Source: Schmidtea polychroa (Eukaryota). From it: a stretch of 64,000 nt of DNA. The notes under the pieces are model-generated. The model was not told the origin of the DNA, searched no databases, and was given only the letters and a program-made list of their open reading frames with translations. The position numbers and the translations under genes were made by a program. Of this stretch, positions 2,567-43,336 are shown piece after piece; the stretch's first letter is position 1; each line of letters begins with the position of its first letter. Where the stretch lies: NCBI GenBank assembly GCA_044892525.1, contig CM097888.1, positions 90,644,001 to 90,708,000 on the forward strand. The letters are read 5' to 3'.

Positions 2567-2651
2567 TCTATAATTATATGTACAAATAGTTCTTATCGAT
2601 ACAGGTTCGATATTTTATTTACAATTATTTACATTTTAAGCTAGGTTTGGT

Positions 2652-3171: not shown

Positions 3172-4700
3172 CTATATACGTGAGTTTGGAGGGCGCTGAA
3201 CGTTCCAGGCCTCCACCCACTGTCCTTGTTTGATATCACTTGGTCGTTTCACTCGATGTTGGAAGTTTCTGATTCGGGTCATTTCTAGTTCTCCGCGATG
3301 TCGTTTATCTTTAATTATTTTTATTGTTCCCCCCGTTATGATTAGGAATGCCCCTGTTATTATTATCCCACTGATCCACATCATCTGCTTCACGCTTATA
3401 CTCTCTGGTTTTTCCTTGTTTGTTAATGTTGATATCGCTTCTGTACTTTTCTCGTTTCCTCTTTTGCCATTTCCTTTCATCATTTCCCGTATTCTTGCTA
3501 TTTCCTCGTTCATACCCTCCTTTGCCATCTTTTGTATTTTTTCCATCTCTTCCTCCGAAACATAGTTGTCCTGAGCTTCCTCACCAGTTTTCTTGTGCTT
3601 TCCTCCTTCGTTCTTTTCGTCGTGGTTTTTTCTTTTCTTTCCTCTTTTCCCCGGGTATCGTCGGCATTCTCTTTTTGATTCAATCCTCCAGATACAAACC
3701 GTGTATTCTTTCGGCGGCTGCTGCTGCGTCACATATTGATGGCATCTCTCACCTGGTCCTAATCTTGAAATACAGACTTTGTGCTCTTTTCTAGGTTGGA
3801 TCTGCGTTATTACTACTTCACCACCTTTTCCTAGGTGTACCTCTTTTCCTTTGACGTTCGTTATTCTCTTCCCGTCTCGATTTCTCACATCCCGGCTGAG
3901 CCCCCAAAAATCATGTTGGGGTCACACCTCGGCTGACCATTCTACCATGTTGGCGGGTCTAAGGGTTGATTGTCCATCTCGAATAAAAGGTGCCACCGAT
4001 TTGTCAACCTGGAGTGAAACCCCACATAACTTTCTTCCAACATAGTGCCCGTGAATCACTTCACGTTGGTACTGCACTATGCAGGCGAGACGCCAGCAAG
4101 CAGGTGAGCTTCTGCCTTAAAACTACTCCTTGCTGAGGCTTCGACTTCCCATTCACGACTGCCGATAGAAGGGCTTACGTCCATTTCCTTACACAACCAC
4201 CTATCAGGATTCGCTGAATGCAAATTGGGAAATTCTCACTAGATCTTGCGGGTTCTCTACTCAACCCACTTAATTAAAGTCTAATTATTCATGAACGAAA
4301 ACGTGTAAGACAACAAGATTTATTAATTTCAACGTTATGACACAAGGATTCAGCTGTACACTTTACTAATGTTTGTCGAAAGAAGAGAAAACATCATAAT
4401 CAACATAGATCGGATCCTTGTTCCTCATCCTGACCGCCACTGGGGTTTTATTGTTTCTCCCATTCAGTGTCGGCGAATAATTCGTCGAGGTTGAAAAACT
4501 CGGAAGCGTTCTCTTCCCACCTTGATTTCGGTATGCTTCTTGTATTCTTACTTCTGTTATTGGTTCTGTGTCCTCATTTATCAGTACTAATTTCTGATAC
4601 GCTCTAGACATGCATCTTCCTAGTATGCACTTTTCCTTTAAGTCCCATTCTTCCTTTAAATCCCACTGCTGCTCTTGTGCTTGCTTTCTCTTTTCTTGTT
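3172..4700 (-). pseudogene. Single-pass membrane protein ORF split by a 639-bp insertion and 5'-truncated by deletion
   Basis: Removing 3885-4523 plus one GAAATC copy rejoins ...IQEAYRN|RDGKRITNVKG in frame. There is a hydrophobic segment MWISGIIITGAFLIITGG near the C-terminus. Confidence 0.8.
3885..4523 (-). mobile_element. Inserted copy of LTR 3' end + PBS (strong-stop-like cDNA) with 6-bp target duplication
   Basis: 3889-4523 matches 16530-17164 (635 bp, one mismatch seen, 4140 vs 16781). gatttc is present at both 3879-3884 and 4524-4529. Confidence 0.88.
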
Positions 4701-14716: not shown

Positions 14717-15123
14717 TTACGACTGGCTGGCACTATTCAACAGCTCAATCTTCCTCCTTCCTGATCGGTTGGACTTTTCACAACTCGACCTTACGACTGG
14801 CTGGCACTATTCAACAGCTCAATCTTCTTCCTTCTGATCGGTTGGACTATTCAACAACTCGATCTTACGACTGGCTGGCACTATTCAACAGCTCAATCTT
14901 CCTCCTTCCTGATCGGTTGGACTTTTCACAACTCGACCTTACGACTGGCTGGCACTATTCAACAGCTCAATCTTCTTCCTTCTGATCGGTTGGACTATTC
15001 AACAACTCGATCTTACGACTGGCTGGCACTATTCAACAGCTCAATCTTCCTCCTTCCTGATCGGTTGGACTTTTCACAACTCGACCTTACGACTGGCTGG
15101 CACTATTCAACAGCTCAATCTTC
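14717..15123. repeat. 74-bp tandem array, 5.5 units, alternating A/B variants
   Basis: ttacgactggctggcactattcaacagctcaatcttc recurs at 14717, 14791, 14865, 14939, 15013 and 15087. Confidence 0.97.
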
Positions 15124-15495
15124 AATATTCCTCGCTCTGCATGCTTCTATTTCTCTTTTCTTCTTTTACTCTAGTTTACCATTTTCTCTGTCTACTTTTA
15201 ATTTGTCGACTTAATCTTTACCGCTTGGGAGTGTTTCCCCTTTCCCCCCTTGCTCAAAACGCACGACGATCGCGATGATCCATTTCTACCTTGGCATGGT
15301 GATCAGTCATGTCGCAAAAACTTCTCATCATATGCGATGGTACCCCGCCCTACGCTTCTTACTTGGGTTGATCAGTTATCCCCTCCCAACGGGTTCTTGC
15401 AATAAGACGTACCGCTCGAAGGTGGCTCGGTTTGTACCCCTGCAGTCTATATTGGGACTAATTCCACGTTATTCAACCCTCTCTTCATTTGATTC

Positions 15496-15726: not shown

Positions 15727-16212
15727 TCATTCGCCATAATAGACCATATGGGTCTCTTTTATTTCATATTTGCACATCGTGCATCTTTTTAGGTCTTTTA
15801 CACACTCTTCACAGTGACTGAGGTGTCCACACGGCAAGAATAATACGCGAATAGGACGGAGTTTGCAGGCTATACAAGTTCGTAATTGGTTAACTTTTTC
15901 CTGTATTTTTTGTTCGATTGCATCTGGTATTGTATTTAGTGAGTCTTTTAGACGCTGATAATCTAGATTTAATGTTGGGTGGTTCAATCTCTCTTGATAC
16001 CACTGATATACGGTTTCGGGGTTTATTTTTCCATCTGGGCGACTTAGGCCTGTGGCTAATATCATATGATTAGGTACGACTGGTGTTTGTCCGATTGCTT
16101 GCAGTAATATCGCGTTGATTTTTTCTCTTTTATGCGTCAGTGTTGTTAGGGAGTCGTTTTCTATATCGATAAACTTGAGCAGTTGTTGCATTTGGTTCGC
16201 GAATTCTGTCAT
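15727..16212 (-). CDS. C-terminal C3HC4 RING protein (IAP/MDM2-type RING), no BIR domain seen
   Basis: CIAC...IRVLFLPCGHLSHCEEC...LKRCTMCKYEI at the extreme C-terminus. First ORF after the PBS. Confidence 0.85.
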   Translation of the reverse strand: MTEFANQMQQLLKFIDIENDSLTTLTHKREKINAILLQAIGQTPVVPNHMILATGLSRPDGKINPETVYQWYQERLNHPTLNLDYQRLKDSLNTIPDAIEQKIQEKVNQLRTCIACKLRPIRVLFLPCGHLSHCEECVKDLKRCTMCKYEIKETHMVYYGE

Positions 16213-16529: not shown

Positions 16530-16547
16530 ATCCCGGCTGAGCCCCCA
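16530..16547 (-). promoter_or_regulatory. Primer-binding site complementary to tRNA-Pro 3' end
   Basis: TGGGGGCTCAGCCGGGAT vs canonical Pro PBS TGGGGGCTCGTCCGGGAT (16/18), located 7 nt after the LTR-terminal AACA. Confidence 0.88.
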
Positions 16548-17088
16548 AAAATCATGTTGGGGTCACACCTCGGCTGACCATTCTACCATGTTGGCGGGTC
16601 TAAGGGTTGATTGTCCATCTCGAATAAAAGGTGCCACCGATTTGTCAACCTGGAGTGAAACCCCACATAACTTTCTTCCAACATAGTGCCCGTGAATCAC
16701 TTCACGTTGGTACTGCACTATGCAGGCGAGACGCCAGCAAGCAGGTGAGCTTCTGCCTTAAAACTACTCCTTGCTGAGGCCTCGACTTCCCATTCACGAC
16801 TGCCGATAGAAGGGCTTACGTCCATTTCCTTACACAACCACCTATCAGGATTCGCTGAATGCAAATTGGGAAATTCTCACTAGATCTTGCGGGTTCTCTA
16901 CTCAACCCACTTAATTAAAGTCTAATTATTCATGAACGAAAACGTGTAAGACAACAAGATTTATTAATTTCAACGTTATGACACAAGGATTCAGCTGTAC
17001 ACTTTACTAATGTTTGTCGAAAGAAGAGAAAACATCATAATCAACATAGATCGGATCCTTGTTCCTCATCCTGACCGCCACTGGGGTT

Positions 17089-17877
17089 TTATTGTTTCTC
17101 CCATTCAGTGTCGGCGAATAATTCGTCGAGGTTGAAAAACTCGGAAGCGTTCTCTTCCCACCTTACGCCAGCGGCTGATATGATTCGCGCTGAGGGTCCC
17201 GTTGTTAGGTCGATGGACACGTGAGAGTTGCCACCGTTGGTTGAGTCCTCTATTGATGGGATGTTTGGCTTTGCAGTAGCGCGCTCGCGCTGTCTCTTCT
17301 TGCGCTCTGCACGAGAGAGTTGTTTGCGCTTGGGTTTGCTTGAAGATGCCACTTGCAGACGGGTGACTGATACAGATGGACTAGCAGTGGGGGGCTTACT
17401 GGTACCCGTGATGACAACATCTGGACGCTTGGGGGACCATTCGGTTTCGACGCAGTCTCGGCACGGTCTCTTGAACGGTGGAGATGGATTCGAGGAAAGG
17501 TTGTGATGAGGCGGAAAGATGTCATCGGCCTCTCGGATGGGAATCTGCACGATTTTTCGGGTTGTAGCCGCCTGCACGTAAACCTTATGCAGTGCCTCGG
17601 ATTGTTCTCTGATTAGACTTCTTTGGGCACGGCTCTCAGATATTAGCGCGTCCCGGCAATGCTCGCTACGATCGAGCTTCTTTTGGATCTCTTTCATCCG
17701 AGCGGGACTAAACCATGTCCCTTCCAGCTCGTCTATCTTCCTCTTGTAACGTCCAATCTGAGTTTGTAGGTCCTTTATCACCGTATTTTTATCCGCGCAC
17801 GAGAAGCACGGCCGTAATGCTGATTTAGTGGTTGGTAGCATGCTTGCTATAAATAATACTAATGAAATGGGGAACAT
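17089..17877 (-). CDS. LTR-encoded 262-aa protein of unknown function (CxxC, coiled coil, basic arm, acidic tail)
   Basis: Intact ORF clearly paralogous to 39165-39923 (LRPC.SCADKN, EGTWFSP..MKE, EHCRD.L..ESR.QR, QSEALHKVY). Confidence 0.85.
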   Translation of the reverse strand: MFPISLVLFIASMLPTTKSALRPCFSCADKNTVIKDLQTQIGRYKRKIDELEGTWFSPARMKEIQKKLDRSEHCRDALISESRAQRSLIREQSEALHKVYVQAATTRKIVQIPIREADDIFPPHHNLSSNPSPPFKRPCRDCVETEWSPKRPDVVITGTSKPPTASPSVSVTRLQVASSSKPKRKQLSRAERKKRQRERATAKPNIPSIEDSTNGGNSHVSIDLTTGPSARIISAAGVRWEENASEFFNLDELFADTEWEKQ

Positions 17878-17959
17878 ACGATTTTAGAATAAATTAGATA
17901 CGACCCGCGTCCATTCGTGGATACTTGACCGTCGAAAAGAAGGAAAACTTATTCTACAA

Positions 17960-19545
17960 TCCGGTTTTACTACGGATCTTAGTTGTTAAAACAGTTTATT
18001 TAACCAAATGCCATCGGTTTGACGCATGTTATGAACTTTGACTATCTATTGATCTAACTGTATGCATGAGGGACGTAATAATTGATAGGGTGTAAATATA
18101 ATATTGGTGAAACAATATAATAATGCTTTAGTAGAGGGACATTATAGTATGCGACCAAACCTTGCTATATGTTATCTATTTTAATTTATTAAAAACAAAT
18201 TACTATCGCTCTCAACATATTTTTGATTCGAAATTTGTTATTGGAAGTGCACTTTTAATTCGGTAGTGAATGTGATTATCTATGTTGTCTACCATTGGTC
18301 TGAAAATATGTGATGAGTTTACATCAGCCATTACTTTAACACCCTCATGGAAAATCCCATCGGTCATAACATATCCAAATTTACGGATACTGCTGTCGAC
18401 TGGTTGATTACATTATCGACCTATTGTGAATGTCACGTGTCGCGACTACTATGTATGCTAGTCTGATATTCTGTGCTCTCACCGCATGGATTCGTGTATG
18501 GCTACTATCTTATCTCACTCACTTGGTGTATGCCATTTTCACGGTGATTTTATCGATCCTGCTGTCGTATGATTTTCTCTGCACAGTGATTTATTTGAGT
18601 TATGATTTATGCTACCGCCAGTTCTCATCGCGGAATTTTACCCTTATCAACTTGTGTGAATGATCACCATCGTTTGGAAATTTATTGGATCTTTTCAGTG
18701 ATCGTCGAGGGAATAATTCTACCAAATACTGGAGCATATTACTACTCTCGTCATTCTACTCGGATTTTCCTATTCAGATGTAATGCCGTCTCGATGAAAC
18801 CTGTCCTTTTCTCTCAGGTTCAATAATTTGGATATATACAGTGACGACCTGGCTCTTATTGTAGAAATAAATGTTATTAATTAAATTTGGTGATATTTTA
18901 CCTGTTTATAATTTTTGAAATAACTAAGTCCATAAAAACTTTCTGATTATAATACTAGAGAGGTTTTCGTAGAATCTCGCATTTTATAGTTTCGAGTTAG
19001 TTAAAGTTTTTAGAATACTTTCGTAACCTGACATACAATCTGGACAGGTTAGATGACATTGGGTCTATGATAATGGAATTTCATACGAATTTAGTTCTAC
19101 TGAGTCCGGCAAATAGACGTTGTCGCAATTAATTTGATAAAACCATGTTTCCAGATGAAGCGTACTATGAGATGTTGTTATTTTTGACGAAGTTCACTAA
19201 ATCGTGGTCTGGATCTCTTTTTTCAATAGGGGTAAGACTTACGAAAAACGACTTGACGAAAGAAGAATGCGACGCCCTCAATCACTGTGCAAATCCTTGA
19301 AAATCCCTTCATTCGTATGACTATCTTTGTGAAATCATTGTCTACCGGTTATTTTTTATCCATACCCCATTGTGATAGTTTAGTCGCATCTTCAGCGATA
19401 GGACCCGTGAAGAAGCCTTCACATTCCGGCCCAATCTAGCTGCGCGATTGAAATACTCCATGTCCACCGGCTGAGCTCCCGAAGGCACCTCATACCATGA
19501 CATGGAGTATCTCAACTCCACGTTACTCGTTAAATGAAAATTCAT
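17960..19545 (-). pseudogene. Possible decayed upstream ORF within the LTR
   Basis: Coding-like stretches interrupted by stops and frameshifts; no family recognised. A similar slot exists at ~40450-41800. Confidence 0.3.
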
Positions 19546-31600: not shown

Positions 31601-31980
31601 GTGCGTCCACGGCAATCGACGAGTAGTTCGTTAGCGCTTAAAAAATCAGATCCTAATATGGGGATAATAACCTCTGCTATATAAAATTTCCACTCAAATA
31701 ATTGGTCGGACAGAAATGGCAACGAGAAAGCAATTGTCTTTGAACCTAAAGTCTCAACAACACTACCGTTTGCGGCCTTCAAAGAAATATCGACAGTGTT
31801 GAGGTCTGGAAGGTACTCTTTAGGTAAGATCGACAAGCTGGAACCAGTGTCGACAAGGAATTTTAGTCTGTTGGAAGGAGACGACAATATATTAAAAGCG
31901 TTTGACTCTGCTTCTATTAAAAATAAATCTGATTTTGATGAAATTTTGCCTCCCACCTCTGCCGCTAGAAGTGGTGGCAT
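28615..31980 (-). CDS. Pol: protease, RT, RNase H, integrase
   Basis: FLVDTGSS; PWSSPLHLVPKK, YIDD; TDASNVAIGA, DRELL, TDHKPL; HHPG...CIGC, HIDLVGP, ITDRGSQF, IERFH. Confidence 0.96.
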   Translation of the reverse strand: MPPLLAAEVGGKISSKSDLFLIEAESNAFNILSSPSNRLKFLVDTGSSLSILPKEYLPDLNTVDISLKAANGSVVETLGSKTIAFSLPFLSDQLFEWKFYIAEVIIPILGSDFLSANELLVDCRGRTLRINNQLNCSTIPSNIFEDPQRIGTDDINTTPSKTVITIEHPKIAVDIINRCFNTPISDVSKPLYCHTIDTTSSLPVRCKIRPLSNEKLEFVRSEFTNLLHEGTIRRSKSPWSSPLHLVPKKDGTFRPCGDYRNLNAITVHDSYSMPLVSDILHRLSKAKIFSTIDLVKAYHQIPVRESDIEKTAVITPIGLFEYVHMPFGLRNSAQTFQRYIDQVLMDLPFAVPYIDDILIGSPDLETHITHLTRTLTALRQYNLKVNVDKCTFFQHETRFLGHLISADGIRPPPDRLDTIAKFPLPKTVSQLRSFLGTINYCHRFIPGVSDILSPLSGLVSKPKKSLVSWSDTTLSAFENAKSALSKIQTLHFPNADLPWSLTTDASNVAIGAVLHQLHNDISEPLEFFSKKLSSAQRKYSAFDRELLGIYLSIKHFKHLLEGRPFVIYTDHKPLTYLFGMKDPSPRQQRQISYISEFSCEIRHIAGKENVIADCLSRSTNAILHDPIFPVQCLRDNPPSAKDLAAFGDKLEIVDGVHFDSSLSGVLRPILHDSLRKLAFHSIHDLHHPGLSATFNLLHSHVVWPAMRHDIKLWVSQCIGCQQHKITRHTKPQMIHYPTGNRFEILHIDLVGPLPSDRGFSYLLTMIDRKTRWFEVIPLKNISAEIVANSILQHWISRYGVPKSIITDRGSQFESQLFQQLTEKLGIQHLRSTAYHPQTNGMIERFHRTLKTSLGILSSRLNWTKALPFVLLGWRNTPSRTTGTTPAQLLFGSSTSLPNELVDFDNAPTFEELDMARDHFLSIDSNPQFSYASSYTPYVPKSFKDATHVYLRNITDSGLKPRYSGPYKLIDIKDNNAHIVINGVTQNINLCRLKPAFMISDDVDEDKLHSDLEKVSVEPISTTSNENLSVEPATDSNEIARTMITNYQRDENLATENTHSATTNPLNLRSIVSKPDKQRTAKNVKHSDKIWVRQIGEDISKPPRLARVYSNENLTHLMLKFT

Positions 31981-31992
31981 TATAAGTTTTTT
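31950..31992 (-). promoter_or_regulatory. Predicted -1 ribosomal frameshift signal (A AAA AAC + pseudoknot)
   Basis: The heptamer is in Gag phase and -1 gives the Pol frame. After a 6-nt spacer come TGCC/GGCA and CCACTTCT/AGAGGTGG stems. Confidence 0.75.
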
Positions 31993-34721
31993 TGATTGTT
32001 TGCTTTAGGTTTTGTGTAATTGGAGCAGCCTTCGAAGCATTTTAAGGCTTTATCTCCAAACCTGTCGTGGTATATACACTTGTCAAGTATCTGACAGGAT
32101 GGTGCTTTATCTCGCCAATTGCAACCTAAATGGCAGAACCGTGCCTTGTTACGAAACTTAAAATGGAAACGGCACAGGTTCCTGGTTGCAGGTGAAGGTG
32201 AACGTTGACGAGTATTTTGCACCAAGTGTGATTTTTGGGCATATTGCCTGTCGTCATTTGTCCGCCTGGTGGACATGCTATTCTCAAGCTCGCTGATGCG
32301 TTTAGTGAGGCCTGTAATAGCGCAAAGTAAAGCTTCTTCGGTCGAAGGTTTTAAAGAAGAAGAAGGTAAAATTTCGGGGTTAGTGCTGCTACTTAACTGC
32401 ACAGAGCAAGTTGGTTGCGGACCAAGTGGCACGACTTCGTTAATCTTGTCGGCCATCTTTGCTAGCTCTACCACGTCTGCTGTTGACGAAAGCGCTAAAA
32501 TTTGTTGTGCGTGTGGCGGTAAAGCAGACAGAAAAAATTGCCTCAAGAGTTTTTGATCCGCCGCAGCCTCCGGGTGTATTTGCGTTAGTTCCGCCATAGC
32601 GTGTTGCAAGAACTGTGATGGTTTTCTGCTGCCCAAAGTTTGCGTCTTGAAGTATTTAGTGAAGACGGCAGCTGTAGGTTCCTTAAAAATATCGAGGATT
32701 GCCGTACGCAATTCTTCATATGGGTTTTTTACGCTAGTAGGCGAAGTGCGAAGGATCACGGACGAAAGTTTACTTAATATCGTCGGCGGAATCAACGGCA
32801 AGATGCGACAGTATTTGTCTCGTGAACTGGTTACCTCGATTCCCTCGAGTACTAGTTCGGTAGCTATCAGCCAAGTAATTGGAGAGTTATTCTCATCCAA
32901 AAAATATTGACATAAGTACGTTGATCGCTGGTTGTTGGACCTACGCTTATGTTTTGCCTGTTTGGGGTTGCTGCCTGAGTCATTCTCCGAATCGGAGGAA
33001 CCGCCAGAAAGTGGCAACAAACAATGAATGACGCTGTATGGTGTCACTCCATAGTCGCCCAAGGTACGACTGTCGGAAAGGATGTTGCCGTTATACGACA
33101 AGAGAAAACGGCATTTGTGATTAGTCAATGTGCTGTAATTTTTAGAAAGACCTTTAATTGTAGTGTCTGTGTCAACTGAAACGGTTTGTGTCTTATTTGT
33201 TCCAGGGTTTTCTATTAATATTTGGAACTTTTTGGGCCCCGGTGCGGCGCTACCCTCTCGTGTGGGCTGATGCTTATTTAAATAATTTTTTATAATTTTA
33301 TATATGATATCAATAATAATATAAATCAATAATAATATAGTATAATTTAATAATAATATAATAATATAATTTAGAGGTAATCGATCTAAGGTACCTGGCG
33401 GTGCTGACACGGGCATTGCTTGATTGAGTCTCGATTCGCTGGGAGACGGTTTATTATCGTGAATAAATGGCTGTCCCGGTGCACGAGAGTTTAATGTGAA
33501 AAAATCATTATTCTGTTGCATTAAGAATTCATTTGGATTTGGTCGAAGCATGATGCGTTGTGGGGCTGTGTGTAAGACATCACTCGTTAGCAATTTGTTA
33601 TTTGGTATATAATTATTGATCGGAGTCATTTTTTGACGATTTTCAACGGCAATCATCTCAGCCAATGCTTGCCGGGAAACATTAATCGAATCAAAATCTA
33701 TATCGGCTGTATCTTTATATTTCTGATCGTAATGTGAGTTCGGTTTCTCCGAGCCAAATATGCGATTTATATCCATTTCGTTTCGATACTGATACTGACC
33801 GTAGTTAAGCACACCGTTGTTGTTTGCCTGTTGATTGATGTTGTGATCGTATGACTGATTATTATTGTTGTTATTGTTGATTGCGGCGTGGTTTTGAGAA
33901 TTTAACTGGTAGAAACTTTCCAGCAGAGAATTCGACGAACCAACTGAATTCAAACTGTTCATAAATGATTTCTGATCTGAAAGCCGTGACAGGGGAGATG
34001 TAGAATTCAGTGTACTGTGGAATTCAGTAATATCATTACCAGCTGAGCTATTGAAAGCACTGAATAGGGGAAATTCGGATTTAGTATCCGATGATTCAGA
34101 TTGTAATTGAATACTTTTCTTGATAAATTTGAAAGACGATTTATTTATCGGGTCAGCAATTTGAAATTGACCATTTGGAATATGATTATTATCTGTGATA
34201 TTTGCAGGGGTCGAAATGGAATCACCTAGAACGACTACGGGATCCAAAGAATCACGATCTGGAATTGTCTGAGTTAATTTGATATACTCTTCTCGATTCG
34301 ATGACAAAAAACAGGAATGAGCAATTATCAATTGATCTATCAGCCTATCAATATCATGGGATATAGGATTAAATTTTGATGAAAGTTTTAATTCAGAAAA
34401 TATTTTGGAAAGCATATGGAACATATGTTGACGTAATTCCGCTGTTCGTTTATGAGAAACTAACATAGATTGTATTTCCTGTAATCTGGATTTAGCAATG
34501 ATATTAGATAAATAAGTTTCTAATTGTTCAAATCTTGAACATTGTTCTGGCACTTCTGACACCAATGTTGTGGTTGGCGTAGTCCTTTCTGGTAATTTGG
34601 CAATCGCACGATGATAGGTTTCGCGAGTAATCCAAAATCTGGGATCAAGATTTTTTAGATTTTCTGTGTCTTCTTGAAAACTTCCGAGAATCATGAAAAT
34701 TGATTTAGAAAACGGGAACAT
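31980..34721 (-). CDS. Chimeric ORF1: host-like N-terminal region + ubiquitin-like domain (LPLSGG) + CsRn1-type Gag
   Basis: Starts inside the 5' LTR and reads through the PBS (TTLVSEV). Gag motifs KPSQFL, FLSALP, CRFHFKF..KARFC...C. Confidence 0.88.
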   Translation of the reverse strand: MFPFSKSIFMILGSFQEDTENLKNLDPRFWITRETYHRAIAKLPERTTPTTTLVSEVPEQCSRFEQLETYLSNIIAKSRLQEIQSMLVSHKRTAELRQHMFHMLSKIFSELKLSSKFNPISHDIDRLIDQLIIAHSCFLSSNREEYIKLTQTIPDRDSLDPVVVLGDSISTPANITDNNHIPNGQFQIADPINKSSFKFIKKSIQLQSESSDTKSEFPLFSAFNSSAGNDITEFHSTLNSTSPLSRLSDQKSFMNSLNSVGSSNSLLESFYQLNSQNHAAINNNNNNNQSYDHNINQQANNNGVLNYGQYQYRNEMDINRIFGSEKPNSHYDQKYKDTADIDFDSINVSRQALAEMIAVENRQKMTPINNYIPNNKLLTSDVLHTAPQRIMLRPNPNEFLMQQNNDFFTLNSRAPGQPFIHDNKPSPSESRLNQAMPVSAPPGTLDRLPLNYIIILLLNYTILLLIYIIIDIIYKIIKNYLNKHQPTREGSAAPGPKKFQILIENPGTNKTQTVSVDTDTTIKGLSKNYSTLTNHKCRFLLSYNGNILSDSRTLGDYGVTPYSVIHCLLPLSGGSSDSENDSGSNPKQAKHKRRSNNQRSTYLCQYFLDENNSPITWLIATELVLEGIEVTSSRDKYCRILPLIPPTILSKLSSVILRTSPTSVKNPYEELRTAILDIFKEPTAAVFTKYFKTQTLGSRKPSQFLQHAMAELTQIHPEAAADQKLLRQFFLSALPPHAQQILALSSTADVVELAKMADKINEVVPLGPQPTCSVQLSSSTNPEILPSSSLKPSTEEALLCAITGLTKRISELENSMSTRRTNDDRQYAQKSHLVQNTRQRSPSPATRNLCRFHFKFRNKARFCHLGCNWRDKAPSCQILDKCIYHDRFGDKALKCFEGCSNYTKPKANNQKNL
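34551..34564 (-). promoter_or_regulatory. PBS complementary to tRNA-Leu (14-nt match)
   Basis: TGGTGTCAGAAGTG directly after the 5' LTR; canonical Leu PBS is TGGTGTCAGAAGTGGGAT. Confidence 0.85.
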
Positions 34722-35908
34722 GTCCGATTATACAATTTCAATAAGCTGTTATTAATACGATCAGGATAAGTATATTATTTCAAAATCAAAATCCAAATAT
34801 AGCGATCAAGATTGAAAACGAATTATAATTCTCAAAAAACAACTACAATTGTAATATTTTAAAACACCCAGTTTATTCATTTAACTAAAACAAAAGAGAT
34901 TTAAATCAATTGTGTATAAATTTTAGAAAAGTAATTAAAACTGGAACAACTGAATTGGCAGTAATTAATATAGAAATAATTTTCTAGGTAAGCAATCAAA
35001 TGTAGGAAAGCGAAAATTATTACTAGAATTTCATGAAAGATTGCGGTATTAAAATGAAGTAAAATAAGAACAGACTAAATAACTGGTTTAGATTTATTAA
35101 TTTCTTCTTTTATATCTAATTCATTGATAGGGAGCGACCAATAGTTGACATCGATATAATCCTCCAAAGCATAATCAATACCCAAATTTGCCGAGTATTG
35201 ATTGGAATTGAAAGAATTGGTCGGCGACATCGAAAAGATTTCCATAACTCGTTGACCACTTTTGACAGTATTCGTTTTTCAATGAACCTTCAGGATTGAC
35301 AGTAAATATCCGTTTCGGATCTATTCCGACAGCTTGGTAAGCAATGACGTCGTTGATACTGTTACCGAAACCGGCATACAGAGGATGGACACAATCGGAA
35401 AAAAGTGATCGAACATCATTTAGACATTGGATTTTGAAATATTCCGGTTTCTTTTCAATGACTTCTCGATGCAATGATTGGAAAAGCGATGTTGGCGAAA
35501 GAAGAATCGGGTCTTCTGGAAGTTTATCGGAAAACTCCTGGACGATATCCTGGAGAAACGTTCGAGTAATTCCTGCTTGTCCGACAGCTCGTGCGGATAA
35601 ATAAATGAATCGATAGTTGTTTTGAAAGATTTTGTTTTACAGTTTCACTACTCCAGCTTGCGTCCAATCACGGCCTGGTATTGGTAGAACATGGCATCGA
35701 ATTTTCTTTACTCGTCTGAGATTGATCAATAGAGCCTGATTGATAAGTAGAAGTATTAGCTGATCGCACGAATTTTGATTGACTATAATTGTGCTCTGAT
35801 TGGTCCTTATTCGTTGGTGACCGCGCATTTATATATATAATATAATATAATATAATATAGTATAATAGGTATATAGATATTGTGAAGGCCGTGTAACGGC
35901 TCACTACA
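34566..35908 (-). repeat. 5' LTR (1343 bp)
   Basis: Direct repeat of 27103-28445, followed after 1 nt by the PBS. Confidence 0.95.
35175..35703 (-). pseudogene. Captured lipin fragment, copy in the 5' LTR
   Basis: Same sequence as 27712-28240. Confidence 0.88.
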
Positions 35909-36850
35909 CTAACCACTTCGAAATAGAATTAGGAAAAACTGCTATTTACCAAATTTCAAATGTTAAAAATTTTGTTTCTAATAATAATAGATTACTGTTA
36001 ATATATAAGTAGTATATCGATAAATAAAATGAAAGAAATTTAAGTCAATTTTAATTTAAATTCAACAATTACCACATAAAGATTTTTTGAAGGTATGATA
36101 GACAAGAATTACCATTAATTTTGAACATCATTAATGTAGATTATTGTTAGATCGAAAAGTTTTATAAAGGTTTTATTGGGTAAATCTTGGACTAATTCGT
36201 TGAGATAAGGACAAACCAATCGACAATTTAGTCATCGCGTCTACTTTAAATGCACCGATTGACTTTCAAACATCACAAATGTCATGAAGGAATGTAACAA
36301 GTTTATCCTTTTTTCATTAACACCCCAAGTTTCGTAACATTCCTACTAATAAAGTTCACAAGAAATAATAGCATAAATTTTATAAATAGATTTTCAAATC
36401 TGCTATTCTCAGAATTGTTTGGGTAGGCACATTTCCGGTAAACATCAGCAAGTTAAGAGGGGAAAAAATATTAGAACACTTCAAAGTTTAATATTTTTTA
36501 AATGCGTCCATCAAAGTTAATTTATAAAAATGCAACAGGAAGCGAAATTTTTCACAAAATATAAATATGAATCTTAACGCTAATTATTTCTTTNNNNNNN
36601 NNNNNNNNNNNNNNNNNNNNNNNNNNNNNNNNNNNNNNNNNNNNNNNNNNNNNNNNNNNNNNNNNNNNNNNNNNNNNNNNNNNNNNNNNNNNNNNNNNNN
36701 NNNNNNNNNNNNNNNNNNNNNNNNNNNNNNNNNNNNNNNNNNNNNNNNGCAATGATAAAATATTTACCGTTGGGGATTTAGTCGTCAACTTTAAATATAT
36801 TACTGCAAAAAAAAGAATGAAAAAATTTTTTATGATTAGTTCCTAATTGC

Positions 36851-36915
<65 letters not shown>

Positions 36916-38611
36916 TCATGAAAAATCATGAAACGTAATATAATGATAAAAATTGTAGGGAAACATTATGGAATCTGAGTCCTATTTATTTGACTCATTT
37001 GAGGAAACTCGTATAGAAATGAGGAATACATTAAAATCTCAGCAGACTGCGACTGCTTTTGTTTTCTCTCTCCCAGTTCCGCTTGACGTGTTAATTACTC
37101 CATTGTAGCCAGCCGGCGAGCGGCGCACAGAGTTACCCTAGCTCCCAACCTTTAATGGAACAATAACTCAATTAGCAAACGCGTTGTCATTTATCTGAAA
37201 AAACAAAAAAAAATACAACTTTCTATCCGAAGCATTTGAAAGGCAACAAAAATGAAATTGTTATTTAAGCCGGTATTGCTGGTTGTCAACGCTCGAATTT
37301 CCTACTGGAATATCGTCATAAAATCTGCCTTATTTTGCCGACTATCTCGCATGATCACGTTTGAGCTTGTATTATGAGTATTAATTATCCTTTCGATATT
37401 AATCTACCGATGAGATCGGTTTACATCTCGGCTGAAATAATTTTGTACACATTTCTCCCTCAATGGCAAAACTCAATGTCAAATCTCCTCATCCTGCCGA
37501 ATGGGAACAATGATTTGCACTCGCCTCGTACTCTCTACCGTCGACAGGTACTAATGATTCTTGTCTCTTTCAGACCGAGATGACAACAGAAAAAATAGTC
37601 GTTGTCGTATATTGAAACCGGTCTTGATGTTCTCGTCGATGAAAATGGGCTAATTAAAATCGAAATTGAGTTTTCCATCTCATTTACCGACCAACGAAGA
37701 AAAGACATATTTTCCTCCCGCGCTTCTCGACTGGGAATGAATAATTGTTGCATATTTGATGATAATTGGGAATAATGGTAATTAACCTTTGACTCGTTTC
37801 TAATGCTGCAAACTTACCGACCAGTTTGAGCGGAGGGGGGGGGGGCAATAATGTTTCATGAAATTCGCAAATGACACAATCGATGAAATGTGCCTCCCCA
37901 TCGAATTGCAGAAATTAGGAAATAATTTATATTAAGAGAAAAATACTCAATTAATTGCCTCATATGTTTTTTGTCGGGAAATCATTTAGCTAGAAGGTTT
38001 ATGAATTATAAAAACACTTTTAAGGGTTCACAACTTATTTATTGAAAGATTGCAAGGAAAGGGAGAGGGGAGAATTCATTTGAGGAGATAAATATAAAAC
38101 AAAAGAAAAATTGCAAGTGATTTTCATAATTAACTCTTTCGCACCGACTTTCCGCTAATGACACTATGCTAAATTTATATATTGGAACTTGTTAATATTG
38201 ACCTAAATATGAAATATTCTCATTTTTGTAATCGTGGCGCTTCTGAATATCCTAGAAAGTCCTGGGATAATAAGTCCCAATAGGCTTTATGGACCATTTG
38301 AAAATATCCCAGTAGGATCATGATGAAAGTTTCTGGGACGTATTGTCCCAATAGGGGCGAAAGGGTTAAAGTGCTTTGAATGGTTTGTGAATTTACAAAT
38401 ATAATCACATGGAAAATGCTTGGGACAAAATATGCTTAGGACATTTGGGAACTATTGTCAAGTAACTCTAAAACAGAATATAAAACCTTATCATGCTCTC
38501 CATTATTGAAAACTCCTCTGATAAAACAATATATTTTGAAATAAAATATTTAAAATATTAACACAACTTAGTTGAATAACCCTAGGGTCCGCCATTTTGA
38601 TTTGTGAAATA

Positions 38612-41600
38612 TGTTGGCGTATGAGGGAGAAGAAAACTGTACATACATAACCGTCGTACATGCAAGACCTCATCGTTTAGCTCAAACACTTCCCATGCAT
38701 ACTCCAAATGATCATCCGAATATTCCCACGCATGAGCCCGTGGTGATGTTCCACGTTGGTACTGCCCACACGGGTTGGAGTTGGCTAACAGGTGAGCCCC
38801 TACCTTAGGACTACTGATAACCCACTCGCGGTTCAGGTTCTAAGGTGCCTCAGAAGGACTTACCCGTATTCCCATAGGTAACTTGGTTCGATCCTGGTCC
38901 AAGGGAACGACCATCGATAAGATTTATCTGCACTCCCCATCACATTCATCATCTACTCACATCACTCCGTCATACCTGTCGACAACTATCAAACAAAGAA
39001 AATCACCTAATTATATTAAACTCAACACAAAACGATATTCTACAATCATAAATTGTCAGCATGCAAGTCAATTACACATATATGAAGGTAAAATCAGTGA
39101 GTCTAAATGTACAGGTGGGTTTGTCATTTGATCTAAAGAGTCGGAATCGATGCAAGCCGCGTTATTAGAAAACGTCTCCTTCCGCGAATATTTCATCGAT
39201 GTCTACCGGTAGGCGGTGGTCCGAGACGAATTTGATACCTTCGGCCGGTACCACTCGAAAAACTTCCTTGGAGGGAACAGTATGAGTGGAAGAGATTTCC
39301 TGGATCGTCGACTTCGCCGCCGATAGCGACGCTTCTAGGGCTGCCATCGCCTCTCTGCGCTTTTGGTTCTTTGCCGCTCGAGTTGGGCGTTTCCGTTTCC
39401 GGGATGGCTGATTAGCCTCCACTACCGGGGTATTGCCCGAGGCCACAAGAACTGGGGCCAGAATAGGATCAGACGAGCCGCCGGACATTGGAAGATAACC
39501 TGACAAGATTGGGGCTGGTACGGGTGGTAAATGAGAGCTATGTCCTTGGCAACTCGTGGCAGATGGTCGGGATAACTGGTGGTGGAGTGGGAAAACGTTT
39601 GTCCCATCCACGACGGGAAATTCCCGTACCCGCTTGGCTAATTCTGCCTCCGTATAGACCTTGTGGAGGGCTTCTGACTGGGCTTTGATTGTGAGCCGTT
39701 GGCAACGACTTTCCTCCAACAGGCTATCCCTGCAATGCTCTAGTCGCAGTATTTTACTACGCTCCTCCTTCATTTGTGGCGGGGAGAACCACGTACCTTC
39801 GTAAAGGTCAATTCTCTTTTTCAGTGCCCCGATGTAGAGTTGAAGCTGCGCGATGTCAGCATTTTTATCAGCGCAGGAAAGACAAGGGCGAAGAGCATTT
39901 CCAGATTGGATGGGTGTAGTCATTCTAGAATTTTAATCAATAGTTTATGTTTATATCATTCCCTCATATTCACAATTATTTAGTTACAACACATTCAGAC
40001 AAATTTTACTCAGTCTAGAGACTTTGAAAAGAAAACGGGGAAATGCTTGAAAATTAATTCATTTGGCCTAAAATCACCATTTAATTTAGGGTGGATGGTT
40101 CCCACCTATTACTCCCTTTTGATTATTAGTAATTATGAATTCTATATCTTTACTTTTCGAGAAAATAATAATTGAACAATCCAACTCTTAGCATCGTGGA
40201 TAGTTGATTTGGGTATGCCCCCTGTTGTAGGGTTAGAAAATCAGTAGCATTTATATTTATTTGGGTGGAATCAGTCCTGATGAATGAAAATATTGCGAAC
40301 TATATTAATATATTTAAGAATTAAAATATAATATTTTCCAAAAACGCGCCATGCTCGTTGTCGTGGTGACACCTACGCGTGTGTGTTTGTATGTCGCGTT
40401 TCGTCTCTACGACGCGGCTTATCATGCTTACTGGATCAGTCTAGACTCTAGACTCATGCCCTTCAAGCAAATTCATCTATCCACTCTCTCGCCCTTACAC
40501 ACCGTTCTACTATACTGAGCAATTCCGATTACGCAATGATGACGTCACAATGTAATTTAACATCCAGATTGATTATCATCCTACTGAGATGCATTCTATT
40601 TTAAGGCGTGATAATGTGTGAATTTCCGAGACACAGTCGATTTAGATTTCTATTAGAAGTTTGATGAGTAACAACATTCTAGATGGTAGACGACCAATTC
40701 GGGGAATAATGGGTGAACTGGTGTTGGCAACCTAAGTTTTATCGTGCGGACGACTCAAGATAATCACTCGTCAGTGCATCAAGTGAATAAGTCAGTACGG
40801 AAATTGGTATCTTATCATTCCTACCAGATTCCCGTCGGTCGTTTAATTCTATTAGCCACAGTCTGACTGAAATTCATTTATCAATTATCTGACAACCTCG
40901 ACCGCGGCTTCCCAATGCAATTAACAATTTGCCGATAACACTGTCAGTAGTTGCCCACATCTCTATCGTCGATAGTCAGATAATTGCTCATAATTTATTT
41001 ACCTTATTTGCAGAAAACGGTACTTATCAGCAATCCGAATGTCAACAATCAAGGCTAAAAGTACATCCCCTATGGATTTCATCGCTAACGTGCTGGCGAT
41101 CCAAATCAGACGATATCTTATGAATTTACTATGCTGCAGAAAAACAGTTGGATTTAATCGCAAACGGTGATCATCGAGATTCTTTCTTAGCTACTCTGAT
41201 CGTCAGGCTGATTTTCCTGAAAGATTCTCCTCAATCTATGTGAAGTTTCGTTGGATCTAGCTAAATGCTTATATCGATCTAATCCGGATTAACCTCTGTT
41301 GGTAATTCAAGCTTCCTATACGAATATCAGAAATCTCGATACAAAAGAACGAAATGATAGAATATCCTCCTAACGATCGCGCTGAGTGAAGGCAAATTTT
41401 TACTCCGCAACTGGATTTTTCATCTACCGAGTCTCATCACCCCTCATGACACACCCAAGAAGGCATTCATTTCTGCCGCCATTCTTGCACCGTCATGAGG
41501 GACCAATCAACTCCTTTACATTCAAAAATTTAACGTTCGTATATAAATATAATAATGATAGAATAAATGATGAGCAAAATAAACAAATCGAAATATCCGG

Positions 41601-42745
41601 CGACCATATCGTCTGGGCTCCAAGTATGATGCTTTTCCCTTTTTCGATCATATAGTCAATTTCAGCATTAGCAAACATCTTATTGATTATTATCACCTTC
41701 TCCAGTTCCAATATCTTCGCAACATCTCCTAGATGCGTGTCATAAAAACTCCTCGTGGCTACTTCCTCCATTTGGCATCATACTTGAAATCACCAGGGGG
41801 TATAGTCGTCGGCACCATGAAGAAAGGCAGTTTTTATTTTCAAATAAATTTATTAAATGAAATTATTCTTATTATTTACAAAAAATTTATTAAAGTCAAT
41901 CATAAATATCTATTAAATTCAATCATATAAAACTAATCCATAAATAACTTAACATACTTCGAGGTTTGAAAAACTGGAGTTAATCGGTTAACGCGAAGGT
42001 TTTCGTGAGTAAGTTTACTGAGCTTCTTCCTAAAATCGATTTGGTTGTTTTTGAAATTAGTCCTTCGTAGTAGTTCGTAAGTCAAGTTCTGTAATCGTGA
42101 AAATTAAAGTGGTTCCTGAATGTCGTCCTGTAGAGTTTGGTTAAAAGTGGTGGTGAACAAATTAACAAATTTTACCTGTAGAGTTTGGTTAAAAGTGGTA
42201 CTCTACTAATTTTTCGCGTTTCTTATATACTATTTTTCGTCCAATCAGGACTCAGTTAGGTTGTAATTTTTAATATTTATTATTATTTTATGTTTTTATT
42301 ATAATATATTAGCTTTTAATAACTTAACTTATTTGTTATTATTATTTTATTTATTTTCTTATTTTTCTTATTTTTCTCCTATTTTTTCTGCGGGTTCACT
42401 GCTACTTTATCGTAATACAATTTTTTGTTTTAATTAAACTTAAAGATATTTTTATTTTTTATTTATTGTTTTAATTTCTCGTTTATTTTCTCTCGCTTTT
42501 TTGCTTATTCTATTTCTACTTTATCTATTGTGCTTTAACTCATATCTCTTATGTCCTATTTCTAATTCTTAAGGGTTTTATTTATTTATTACTTATTCTT
42601 ATTTCTTTTTATGGGTATTTTATTGTTTCCTTATTTACTATTGAGGTTTGATGGTAATTTATTTTTTATTATATTTCGTTTATTTTTTTGAGGTTCGTTT
42701 CCCGATTCAGCCCAGTTTTTCTCTACTTCAAAATTTAGCCCAACA
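38612..42745 (-). mobile_element. Solo giant LTR (4134 bp) of a related family
   Basis: TGTTGG...CCAACA ends, AATA 4-bp TSD (38608-38611, 42746-42749), no PBS, and the same promoter/mini-intron/ORF/U5 layout as 16555-20399. Confidence 0.82.
39165..39923 (-). CDS. LTR-encoded 252-aa protein, paralog of 17089-17877
   Basis: Intact ORF with a conserved N-terminal ~100 aa, a basic arm and an IDEIFAE tail. Confidence 0.85.
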   Translation of the reverse strand: MTTPIQSGNALRPCLSCADKNADIAQLQLYIGALKKRIDLYEGTWFSPPQMKEERSKILRLEHCRDSLLEESRCQRLTIKAQSEALHKVYTEAELAKRVREFPVVDGTNVFPLHHQLSRPSATSCQGHSSHLPPVPAPILSGYLPMSGGSSDPILAPVLVASGNTPVVEANQPSRKRKRPTRAAKNQKRREAMAALEASLSAAKSTIQEISSTHTVPSKEVFRVVPAEGIKFVSDHRLPVDIDEIFAEGDVF

Positions 42746-43336
42746 AATAAATGAAAATATCATATTTATCTTTTAGATTTTTTTTAATTCAATAATTTTC
42801 ATATTAATATTTGTAAGACATTAATTCAAAATAATATAATATATAATGATTTATACACACAGCATTTTTCAAGGAAATACACACATGATAAAGGCTGTGT
42901 TGAAATATTGATTATTTTATGTATTGTTTTGATCAACTCTTACAAATATTAATATGGAAATTATAGAAATGAAACTATTTAGTGATAAAATATAAATTAA
43001 TTGTCATAATTAGTCTAAGTAAAGAGAAAATATTCTAACTCATTATGTAATATCAGTCTAGCAAATATGGTGTACAGCACGAATTCTGATGGCTTTATAC
43101 TTGCCATTTACTAGAAATATCTCAATTCGGTTCCTGCCAGATATATGGCTACTACACGCTTTGTGAGGCTTCAAGATGAAAAGGTAACAAAAAGGTAAAA
43201 CTAACACATTGACCAAAGTTAAACAAGAATTAATTGTATCATTAACAAAATTAATTAATAAAATGAATGGCCTTGTAATTTAGTTACTTAGAATAGTAAT
43301 TATTTCAAAACGTCATCATAATTTTCTGAAATTGAA

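What the first reader, a model, noticed from the sequence alone, without database searches (positions are those of the whole stretch)
16555..42745. LTRs that are self-contained genes: a ~4-kb coding LTR family proven by a solo LTR
Seen: two diverged ~4-kb units share the same order on the minus strand: TGTTGGGCT start, purine-rich tract, ATTGG, TATA, mini-intron, decayed slot, intact 250-260-aa ORF, conserved 3' block, CCAACA end. One abuts a PBS, the other has a 4-bp TSD, and a third ORF fragment lies at 21382-21640. The protein has a conserved CxxC/HC coiled-coil N-terminus, an Arg/Lys arm and an acidic LDELFAD/IDEIFAE tail. Known: LTR-borne ORFs exist (e.g. MMTV sag) but are rare in Ty3/Gypsy. 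Inference: a transactivator- or Rev-like regulator that every solo LTR can keep expressing, with ORF integrity despite strong divergence suggesting selection.
Basis: partly seen in the sequence, partly recalled or inferred. Interest (0 to 1): 0.82.

Follow-up and report, generated by a model that had tools for sequence, protein, structure and literature searches.

The report
Flatworm retroelement LTRs carrying a gene
Two diverged 4-kb terminal repeats of a flatworm retrovirus-like element each contain what looks like a complete small gene for a previously undescribed protein, a rare arrangement that could let even orphaned repeats keep making that protein.

Summary
Two minus-strand units, 20399..16555 (3845 bp) and 42745..38612 (4134 bp), share their termini (TGTTGGGCT ... 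CCAACA). They also share a CCAAT/TATA block, a short leader with a consensus splice donor, a homologous intact ORF (262 and 252 aa, 37% identity, E 3e-46) and a conserved 3' block.

Unit A is followed, after 7 nt, by an 18-nt primer-binding site that matches the 3' end of tRNA-Pro, and then by a gag-env-PR-RT reading frame. Unit B stands alone between TATT/TATT flanks. Reading them as 4-kb LTRs that carry a gene is the best explanation (about 0.8).

It is not proven. The only second LTR copy of element A is a 610-bp tail that ends in a repeated primer-binding site. No polypurine tract can be checked, and no other genomic copies could be reached.

The protein has a confident helical hairpin, an Arg-rich arm and an acidic tail. 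It matches no Pfam, PDB or fold-library entry. Its 15 distant relatives are all mis-fused gene models with no organism named, each joined to a different unrelated gene, which fits a dispersed mobile gene.

A regulatory role (transactivator or RNA-export adaptor) is plausible but untested. The "decayed slot" is unsupported. Both assembly gaps lie outside the units.

The parts
16555..20399 (-). Unit A: 3845-bp LTR (5' LTR of element A), TGTTGGGCT ... CCAACA
   Evidence: it directly precedes the primer-binding site and the gag reading frame
17089..17877 (-). ORF pA, 262 aa (probable start at the second Met, 17841, giving 250 aa)
   Evidence: GC3 53% against 37-44% for other ORFs
20026..20062 (-). 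CCAAT-type box (CTGATTGG) and TATA of unit A
19927..20005 (-). Leader of unit A: a 29-nt segment, a GTAAG donor, and the same 29 nt repeated perfectly 50 nt later, ending in AG (putative mini-intron)
16703..16768 (-). Conserved 3' block of unit A (counterpart 38752-38815)
16530..16547 (-). 18-nt primer-binding site complementary to the tRNA-Pro 3' end, 7 nt after the LTR end
15727..16212 (-). RING-finger ORF (161 aa) in the 3.1-kb leader of element A
   Evidence: zf-C3HC4_3, E 3e-11
4604..13450 (-). Element A polyprotein ORF (2948 aa): gag, CCHC, a charged stretch, class III-type fusion glycoprotein, protease, RT. pol is broken once by a deletion; RNase H and integrase are absent.
3889..4523 (-). 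Second, partial LTR copy (last 610 bp of the LTR, the 7-nt spacer and the 18-nt primer-binding site), 99.8% identical to 16530-17164
38612..42745 (-). Unit B: 4134-bp solo LTR of the same family
   Evidence: no gag/pol similarity next to it
39165..39923 (-). ORF pB, 252 aa
42127..42248 (-). Unit B CCAAT-type box, TATA, and 25-nt leader repeated perfectly 48 nt later (GTAAA ... AG)
42746..42749 (-). TATT, upstream copy of the 4-bp flank duplication of unit B
38608..38611 (-). TATT, downstream copy of the flank duplication of unit B
21421..21694 (-). Decayed fragment of a third pA-like ORF (both ends missing, at least one frameshift)

Best explanation
Units A and B are two old, diverged members of one family of about 4-kb long terminal repeats. 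They belong to a flatworm Ty3/gypsy-type, envelope-carrying (gag-env-pol) retrovirus-like element primed by tRNA-Pro.

Each LTR houses what looks like a whole small gene:
- a CCAAT/TATA promoter 0.35-0.5 kb from the LTR start;
- a 25-29-nt first exon that ends in a consensus splice donor;
- about 2.1 kb further on, a 250-aa ORF with a YAG acceptor-like site 1-5 nt before its start codon;
- a poly(A) hexamer about 405-410 nt before the LTR end.

The product belongs to a previously undescribed protein family. From the N-terminus it has a helical hairpin (likely an oligomerisation domain), a conserved Pro/His motif, an arginine-rich arm and a short acidic-hydrophobic tail.

The most likely role is an element-encoded nuclear regulator that binds nucleic acid. 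It would either activate the LTR promoter or help the element's RNA through splicing and export control. Because all the signals sit inside the LTR, both LTRs of an integrated copy and any solo LTR would be potential expression units.

Shown: the units, termini, primer-binding site, ORF homology, selection signature and domain layout.
Inferred: the transcription start, the splicing, the poly(A) site, the U3/R/U5 borders, and the protein's location and activity.

My sub-probabilities:
- the units are LTRs: 0.8;
- the ORF encodes a functional protein: 0.8;
- it is expressed from the LTR's own promoter: 0.45;
- it acts as a nuclear regulator: 0.3.
For: - Shared termini and collinear layout.
- Unit A is followed after 7 nt by an 18-nt site. 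The reverse complement of its 15 template-encoded bases is the exact 3' end of 72-nt tRNA-Pro genes in five unrelated loci. gag-CCHC, glycoprotein, PR and RT follow on the same strand.
- The last 610 bp of unit A, with the spacer and primer-binding site, recur at 99.8% identity at the other end of the internal region.
- Unit B has no adjacent gag or pol and has TATT/TATT flanks.
- Head and tail of each unit share no repeat, so the units are not small elements with LTRs of their own.
- pA versus pB: E 3e-46. Codon-position differences are 110/99/171, with pN 0.44 against a saturated pS of 0.83. No open run longer than 184 codons appeared in 2000 shuffles.
- Fifteen distant relatives (best E 6e-13) share the same module order. 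Each of the 12 that carry a Pfam domain is fused to a different unrelated gene, as expected for a dispersed mobile gene.
- AlphaFold2 gives a helical hairpin (residues 30-51 and 58-111, pLDDT above 90) and helices at the basic arm and the acidic tail.
- Gag-env-pol order is the arrangement reported for flatworm errantivirus-like elements (PMC13524379).
Against: - Only one unit adjoins an internal region, and its partner copy is a truncated tail that ends with a second primer-binding site instead of host flank. The defining 'same repeat at both ends' is therefore not seen intact.
- No polypurine tract can be checked.
- Element A has no target-site duplication.
- Unit B's duplication is 4 bp of A/T only, with a 6.8% chance among all-A/T flanks.
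- No other genomic copy of the family could be fetched.
- There are 41-45 ATGs between the mini-intron and the ORF, so expression needs a distal splice or an inner promoter, neither of which is shown.
- If the TATA is the element's only promoter, R plus U5 would be about 3.4 kb, which has no precedent that I know of.
- No similarity to any known regulator.
Confidence: 0.6

Rival explanations
1. The true LTR is short (about 0.5-0.6 kb, the part duplicated at 3889-4523). The ORF with its upstream 3 kb is then internal 3' sequence of a neighbouring or tandem element, like the 3' accessory ORFs of other Ty3/gypsy elements.
For: Only the last 610 bp of unit A is seen twice. 3' accessory ORFs are common in LTR retrotransposons (PMC10309623; PMC7264820).
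Against: The left edge of the duplicated piece falls inside the ORF, without a TG terminus or inverted repeat. The duplicated piece also includes the spacer and primer-binding site, which a 3' LTR should not. Unit B keeps the whole 4.1 kb collinear up to the same TGTTGGGCT terminus, with matching flanks. No pol or env lies upstream of either unit.
Confidence: 0.1
2. The units are LTRs, but the ORF does nothing for the element. It is a captured host sequence or a chance-preserved frame, and any transcripts are by-products.
For: No known domain. GC3 of 52-53% differs from both the element's genes and the host genes at 37-44%, which could mark a foreign origin. No expression data.
Against: The ORF is intact in two LTRs so diverged that their DNA barely aligns, with third-position excess and pN well below pS. 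The module order is kept in distant relatives. Promoter, donor and acceptor-like sites are kept at matching positions.
Confidence: 0.12
3. The 4-kb units are an independent non-autonomous mobile unit, not an LTR. One copy merely sits next to a truncated retroelement.
For: One copy stands alone with a 4-bp duplication. Relatives of the ORF sit beside many unrelated genes and are never fused to gag or pol in the gene models.
Against: The unit ends 7 nt before a perfect tRNA-Pro primer-binding site. Its tail is co-duplicated with that site. TG...CA ends with a 6-bp inverted repeat and a 4-bp duplication are the LTR and integrase signature. The units have no terminal repeats of their own.
Confidence: 0.08
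4. The odd 3' end of element A (LTR tail plus a second primer-binding site, then unrelated DNA) is an assembly mis-join through a repeat, so it says nothing about the biology.
For: The window is a gapped scaffold with five N runs. The repeat is 635 bp at 99.8% identity. The sequence after the second primer-binding site is unrelated to element A's leader.
Against: Identity stops exactly after primer-binding-site nucleotide 18, the natural end of plus-strand strong-stop DNA. This also fits a real aberrant or recombinant reverse-transcription product. This rival bears only on the second copy, not on units A and B.
Confidence: 0.3

Closest known systems
MMTV sag (superantigen ORF inside the LTR of a betaretrovirus)
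   Same: A complete protein-coding ORF lies inside the LTR, so it is present in both LTRs of an integrated copy and in endogenous copies (my own knowledge; the papers found for 'LTR ORF' are mostly about this case).
   Different: There is no sequence or fold similarity (no Pfam family hit). The host is a flatworm and the element is Ty3/gypsy-type. The LTR is three times longer. The ORF lies downstream of the LTR's own TATA and leader, so it may sit in R/U5 rather than U3. The protein looks nuclear and regulatory, not like a membrane superantigen.
CERV of Cer1 (C. elegans Ty3/gypsy)
   Same: It is a novel accessory protein of an invertebrate Ty3/gypsy element, made from a spliced mRNA and needed for nuclear export of genomic RNA (PMC10309623). 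Cer1 groups next to a flatworm env-carrying element in a pol tree (PMC13524379).
   Different: CERV is encoded in the internal region (gag exons plus a 3' exon), not in the LTR. No homology was detected: CERV was not among the hits of the profile search over 1.84 billion proteins.
Rev/Rex/Rem and Tat/Tax-type regulators of complex retroviruses
   Same: They are small proteins with an oligomerising helical region, an arginine-rich arm and a short hydrophobic or acidic effector motif (my own knowledge; layout).
   Different: No Pfam, PDB-sequence or Foldseek match. No export-signal consensus was established. RNA or DNA binding is untested.
Giant non-coding LTRs (plant Ogre, LARD) and additional ORFs of LTR retrotransposons
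   Same: They have LTRs of 4-6 kb, and extra ORFs beside gag and pol (my own knowledge; PMC7264820 and PMC5408684, listed).
   Different: In those elements the extra ORFs lie in the internal region and the giant LTRs are non-coding. Here the extra ORF is within the LTR.
Gag-env-pol errantivirus-like Ty3/gypsy elements of flatworms, nematodes and bryozoans
   Same: Same gene order and a class III-type fusion glycoprotein (PMC13524379; Pfam PF24664, E 3e-70).
   Different: That survey looked for LTRs only within 3 kb of gag and pol, and in the passages I read it mentions neither coding LTRs nor 4-kb LTRs. Here gag, env, PR and RT are in one 2948-aa frame, and RNase H and integrase are missing from this copy.

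Membership tests
LTR of an LTR retrotransposon | TG...CA termini with a short inverted repeat | tested here: met
   TGTTGG...CCAACA in both units
LTR of an LTR retrotransposon | The same repeat, intact, at both ends of a gag-pol internal region | tested here: inconclusive
   Only a 610-bp tail of the second copy is present, 99.8% identical. The rest was lost together with RNase H and integrase.
LTR of an LTR retrotransposon | 5' LTR followed by a primer-binding site complementary to a tRNA 3' end | tested here: met
   The 18-nt site lies 7 nt after the LTR. Its complement equals the 3' end of tRNA-Pro(UGG/CGG) genes plus CCA.
LTR of an LTR retrotransposon | Polypurine tract immediately before the 3' LTR | not testable with these tools
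   The start of the 3' LTR is absent from this copy, and unit B is solo.
LTR of an LTR retrotransposon | Target-site duplication of 4-6 bp | tested here: inconclusive
   Unit B has TATT/TATT (chance 0.6% overall, 6.8% for all-A/T flanks). Element A has none.
Ty3/gypsy (Metaviridae) | gag with CCHC, then PR-RT-RNase H-IN order; RT grouping with Ty3/gypsy | tested here: inconclusive
   Retrotrans_gag, zf-CCHC, RVP and RVT_1 are in the right order. The RT is 37% identical to that of the neighbouring complete Ty3/gypsy. RNase H and IN are missing, and no phylogeny was made.
MMTV Sag family | Sequence membership of the superantigen family; ORF located in U3 | tested here: not met
   No Pfam family at E up to 1 apart from sub-threshold noise. 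The U3 border is not mapped.
Rev/Rex/Tat/Tax-type retroviral regulators | Sequence or fold membership of one of these families | tested here: not met
   No Pfam hit, no PDB sequence hit, and no Foldseek hit at E up to 0.001 in the PDB or BFVD.
Rev/Rex/Tat/Tax-type retroviral regulators | Nuclear location and binding to the element's own RNA or promoter | not testable with these tools
   Needs expression and localisation data.
bZIP-type transcription factors | Basic region directly N-terminal to a leucine zipper | tested here: not met
   No bZIP Pfam hit (only HALZ, E about 0.03, in relatives). The basic arm lies about 80 residues C-terminal to the helices.

The most novel reading that the evidence does not exclude
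The LTR is a free-standing gene. Its own promoter, a 25-29-nt first exon and a long-range splice deliver a 250-aa nuclear regulator. The ORF lies downstream of the element's transcription start, in R/U5 and not in U3 as in MMTV, which implies a strong-stop region of over 3 kb. Solo LTRs scattered through flatworm genomes then persist as expressed copies of a regulator gene that can act in trans on the family or on host genes. The perfectly repeated leader segment would be part of a splice or strand-transfer switch between the regulator mRNA and genomic RNA.
Probability: 0.2. Interest if true: 0.85.

Novelty: new variant of a known kind. Interest (0 to 1): 0.6.

Why it matters
In the textbook view, LTRs are non-coding control regions. 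The one classic exception is a mammalian retrovirus.

A conserved gene inside the 4-kb LTRs of an invertebrate env-carrying Ty3/gypsy element would have three consequences:
- The gene is duplicated at every integration.
- It survives the recombination that reduces elements to solo LTRs.
- It can seed many regulator-gene copies next to host genes. The distant relatives are indeed found fused to a dozen different host genes by gene predictors.

It also points to a blind spot in surveys that look for LTRs only within about 3 kb of gag and pol. Finally, it adds an uncharacterised protein family, whose relatives could not be assigned to an organism here.

Tried and rejected
- **Word-indexed homologue search.** pA alone gave no hit. 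A ten-sequence alignment gave only four hits, three already known and one new UniParc-only model, with no genomic context.
- **Exact-protein contig look-ups.** pA, pB, relative P0002 and the TRAF-like ORF are not on record (one search was not sent).
- **Rfam.** Nothing over the whole window.
- **Structure comparisons.** The PDB sequence profile found nothing. Foldseek returned only generic helical hairpins, E at least 0.02.
- **'Decayed slot'.** tblastx between the units finds no conserved coding signal outside the ORF and the low-complexity purine tract.
- **Units as small elements with LTRs of their own.** Head-versus-tail comparison found nothing.
- **Units A and B as the two LTRs of one giant element.** Rejected: their DNA is almost unalignable, the primer-binding site follows A and not B, and B has its own flank duplication.
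- **DNA after the second primer-binding site as a diverged copy of element A's leader.** No similarity even at protein level.
- **Bacterial-type promoter/terminator scan.** Not applicable to a eukaryote; ignored.
- **dN/dS.** Synonymous sites are saturated (pS 0.83-0.89), so only pN well below pS can be stated.
- **Giant-ORF segments against the PDB.** No hits.

Full report
**Layout and gaps**

The window has 35% G+C and five N runs. The two runs inside the finding's range, 24006-24571 and 36594-36748, lie between the units described below. They touch none of the units, their ORFs or the nested element, so nothing here depends on continuity across a gap. The 'ORFs' at 23987-24605 are translated N.

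A self-comparison shows three near-identical repeat pairs:
- 3889-4523 = 16530-17164 (635 bp, 99.8%);
- 27103-28445 = 34566-35908 (1343 bp, 100%);
- 60176-60516 = 63660-64000 (99.4%).

The middle pair are the LTRs of a complete, recently inserted Ty3/gypsy element with a 5-bp duplication, GTTAG.

**The observation**

Every element discussed here is on the minus strand. Unit A runs 20399..16555 (3845 bp) and unit B runs 42745..38612 (4134 bp).

- The 9-mer TGTTGGGCT occurs only twice in the window, at the two unit starts (0.3 expected). Both units end in CCAACA.
- Each unit opens with about 300 nt of purine-rich sequence.
- A single CTGATTGG follows, then TATATA 19-29 nt later. The start of a short leader lies 28-30 nt after that.
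- The leader ends in AG|GTAAG (A) or AG|GTAAA (B).
- About 2.1 kb further on lie the ORFs pA (17877..17089, 262 aa) and pB (39923..39165, 252 aa). They are clearly homologous: 37% identity, E 3e-46.
- A further conserved block lies 150-215 nt before the unit end.

Elsewhere the DNA of the two units hardly aligns.

The third ORF fragment is marginal. It consists of two short tblastn pieces in different frames within 21421-21694, joint E 7e-5.

**Are the units LTRs?**

Unit A ends 7 nt before an 18-nt sequence (16547..16530) that starts with TGG. I searched public metagenome contigs for the reverse complement of its 15 template-encoded bases. In five unrelated loci it is the exact 3' end of a 72-nt tRNA-Pro gene with anticodon UGG or CGG. 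With CCA added, the site is a perfect 18-nt tRNA-Pro primer-binding site.

Downstream on the same strand come:
- a 3.1-kb leader with a RING-finger ORF;
- a 74-bp tandem array;
- one 2948-aa reading frame containing gag, a CCHC knuckle, about 1270 highly charged residues, a class III-type fusion glycoprotein (PF24664, E 3e-70), protease and reverse transcriptase.

Gag-env-pol is the gene order recently reported for env-carrying Ty3/gypsy elements of flatworms, nematodes and bryozoans (PMC13524379). The host here is a flatworm: the best named relatives of the neighbouring GPCR gene are all platyhelminth.

Unit B has no gag or pol next to it and is flanked by TATT on both sides. A 4-nt match at that spacing occurs at 0.6% of window positions, but at 6.8% when both flanks are all A/T. 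This is supportive, not decisive. Neither unit has terminal repeats of its own.

Four points make '4-kb LTR' the best reading, at about 0.8:
- the shared termini;
- collinearity across the whole 4 kb;
- the direct abutment to a primer-binding site;
- the solo copy.

**What keeps it from being proven**

Element A has no intact 3' LTR. Its pol gene is broken once, by a deletion that leaves protease and RT but removes RNase H, integrase and most of the downstream LTR. What remains of that LTR is its last 610 bp (3889-4523 includes it).

That copy continues through the 7-nt spacer and exactly the 18 nt of the primer-binding site. It then switches to DNA unrelated to element A's leader. A normal 3' LTR is followed by host flank, not by a primer-binding site.

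The stop exactly after nucleotide 18 is the natural end of plus-strand strong-stop DNA (established retroviral replication scheme). I see four explanations that the window cannot separate:
- a cDNA that kept the tRNA-copied tail and entered the genome without normal integrase processing, which fits the missing target duplication;
- a recombinant formed by plus-strand transfer onto a different element that uses the same tRNA;
- a tandem array with deletions;
- a short-read mis-join through the 635-bp repeat.

The left edge of the partial copy falls inside the pA ORF, with no TG terminus. It is therefore a truncation and not the start of a shorter LTR. No polypurine tract can be examined.

**The ORF is a real gene**

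- Between pA and pB, differences at codon positions 1/2/3 number 110/99/171.
- The synonymous proportion is saturated (0.83). The non-synonymous proportion is 0.44 overall and 0.35 in the N-terminal domain.
- No shuffle of unit A gave an open run above 184 codons, against 264 observed. None of 5000 shuffles of the ORF stayed open.
- The ORFs have GC3 of 52-53%, against 37-44% for every other ORF in the window, whether element or host. I cannot explain this.

**The protein family**

A profile of pA and pB, scored against 1.84 billion representative proteins, found 15 relatives (best E 6e-13). All are UniParc-only gene models with no organism given. The conserved module is the same throughout.

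In 12 of the 15 relatives the module is fused to a different unrelated domain:
- a sodium symporter;
- glycine-cleavage P protein;
- CRAL-TRIO;
- ribosomal L21;
- actin;
- subtilase;
- an ABC transporter;
- a hAT transposase;
- DAD;
- a tyrosine phosphatase;
- peptidase M1;
- an ion channel.

P0008 has no Pfam domain at all, and two relatives (P0003 and P0013) were not scanned. This is what gene predictors produce when a dispersed mobile ORF lies beside host genes. None of these relatives could be placed on a contig, so their relation to LTR termini is unknown.

**What the protein looks like**

AlphaFold2, run with the 17-sequence alignment, gives:
- a confident helical hairpin, residues 30-51 and 58-111, pLDDT above 90;
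- a disordered middle;
- a helix over the Arg/Lys arm, residues 189-201;
- a short helix over the acidic LDELFAD tail.

The nearly invariant residues sit in the loop (GTW..P) and the second helix. The CxxC pair is shared only by pA and pB.

There is no Pfam family, no PDB sequence match and no Foldseek match at E up to 0.001 in the PDB or BFVD.

An oligomerising helical domain, an arginine-rich arm and an acidic-hydrophobic tail is the layout of small nuclear regulators. These include transactivators and RNA-export adaptors such as Rev or the nematode CERV (PMC10309623). That is a resemblance in design only. Membership in any such family was tested and not met.

**How it may be expressed (inference)**

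The spacing from the CCAAT box to the TATA to the leader fits a Pol II core promoter, with the start at the first base of the leader segment.

The mini-intron (50 and 48 nt) is of flatworm mini-intron size (my own knowledge). Removing it alone still leaves 41-45 ATGs before the ORF. In both units a YAG preceded by pyrimidines lies 1-5 nt before the probable start codon. Splicing the leader donor to this distal acceptor would give an mRNA with a 5' UTR of about 30 nt.

Poly(A) hexamers align 405-410 nt before the LTR end. If the TATA also drives genomic RNA, the ORF lies in R/U5 and the strong-stop region exceeds 3 kb. If a second start lies after the ORF, the ORF is in U3, as in MMTV. Only transcript mapping can tell which holds.

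**An unexplained detail**

The 29-nt (A) or 25-nt (B) leader segment is repeated perfectly, 50 or 48 nt downstream, and the repeat ends in the AG of the mini-intron. The repeated sequence itself differs between the units, so the duplication is maintained rather than merely inherited. Reverse-transcriptase slippage between the copies, use of both as acceptors, or a role in choosing between regulator mRNA and genomic RNA are all open possibilities.

**Comparison and novelty**

The classic LTR-borne gene is MMTV sag. My literature search for LTR ORFs returned mostly that case. Extra ORFs of LTR retrotransposons are otherwise internal (the PMC7264820 and PMC5408684 abstracts, and my own knowledge). 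The giant LTRs of plant elements are non-coding (my own knowledge).

The recent survey of env-carrying Ty3/gypsy elements searched for LTRs only within 3 kb of gag and pol. It would have missed 4-kb LTRs lying behind a 3-kb leader.

I file this as a new variant of a known kind: an LTR retroelement whose accessory gene, from a new protein family, lies within a giant LTR.

In this report that position appears only as the bound of the partial LTR copy.
- I worked out by arithmetic alone whether the frames on either side of that copy would match (they would not).
- Nothing has been deleted.

Noticed in passing
window 4604-13450 (-): gag, a CCHC knuckle, about 1270 highly charged residues with no match, a class III-type viral fusion glycoprotein (PF24664, E 3e-70, one transmembrane segment near its end), protease and RT all lie in one uninterrupted 2948-aa frame. 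How a membrane glycoprotein could be made from the middle of a gag-pol frame is unclear. No 2A-type NPGP motif was found.
   Followed up: partly
window 15727-16212 (-): A 161-aa ORF with a C-terminal RING finger (zf-C3HC4_3, E 3e-11) lies in the 3.1-kb leader between the primer-binding site and gag of element A. It may be a second accessory gene. A 74-bp tandem array lies at 14717-15160.
   Followed up: no
window 3889-4523 and 1-3888 (-): The partial LTR copy ends exactly after nucleotide 18 of a second tRNA-Pro primer-binding site, the natural end of plus-strand strong-stop DNA. The unrelated DNA beyond it holds a 238-aa charged ORF with one hydrophobic segment (3888..3172) and an intronless TRAF-like RING+MATH ORF (2566..1178).
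   Followed up: partly
window 27103-35908 (-): A complete young Ty3/gypsy element lies between the two units, with 1343-bp LTRs 100% identical and a GTTAG duplication. Its 913-aa gag ORF starts inside the 5' LTR and carries a ubiquitin-like domain (PF00240) and DUF7041.
   Followed up: partly
window 19927-20005 and 42127-42199 (-): The leader segment between the inferred start and the splice donor is repeated perfectly 48-50 nt downstream in both units, although its sequence differs between them. This suggests concerted evolution or selection on the pair.
   Followed up: partly
window 17089-17877 and 39165-39923 (-): Both LTR ORFs have GC3 of 52-53%, while every other ORF in the window, element or host, has 37-44%. 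The cause is unknown.
   Followed up: partly
window 16660-16830 and 38705-38880 (-): RNAalifold on the conserved 3' block predicts stem-loops in which 5 of 22 pairs are kept through changes on both sides. With only two sequences this carries no statistical weight.
   Followed up: partly
window 60176-60516 and 63660-64000: Another repeat pair (99.4%), about 3.5 kb apart, runs off the window end. It is probably the LTRs of a small or non-autonomous element.
   Followed up: no
window 51712-53340 (+): An intronless 542-aa muscarinic-type GPCR gene. Its best named relatives are platyhelminth. A 94%-identical protein exists only as an unnamed UniParc entry.
   Followed up: partly
window 22359-22623 (+): A weak RNase H-like fragment of another decayed retroelement lies on the opposite strand (tblastn E 4e-5).
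   Followed up: no
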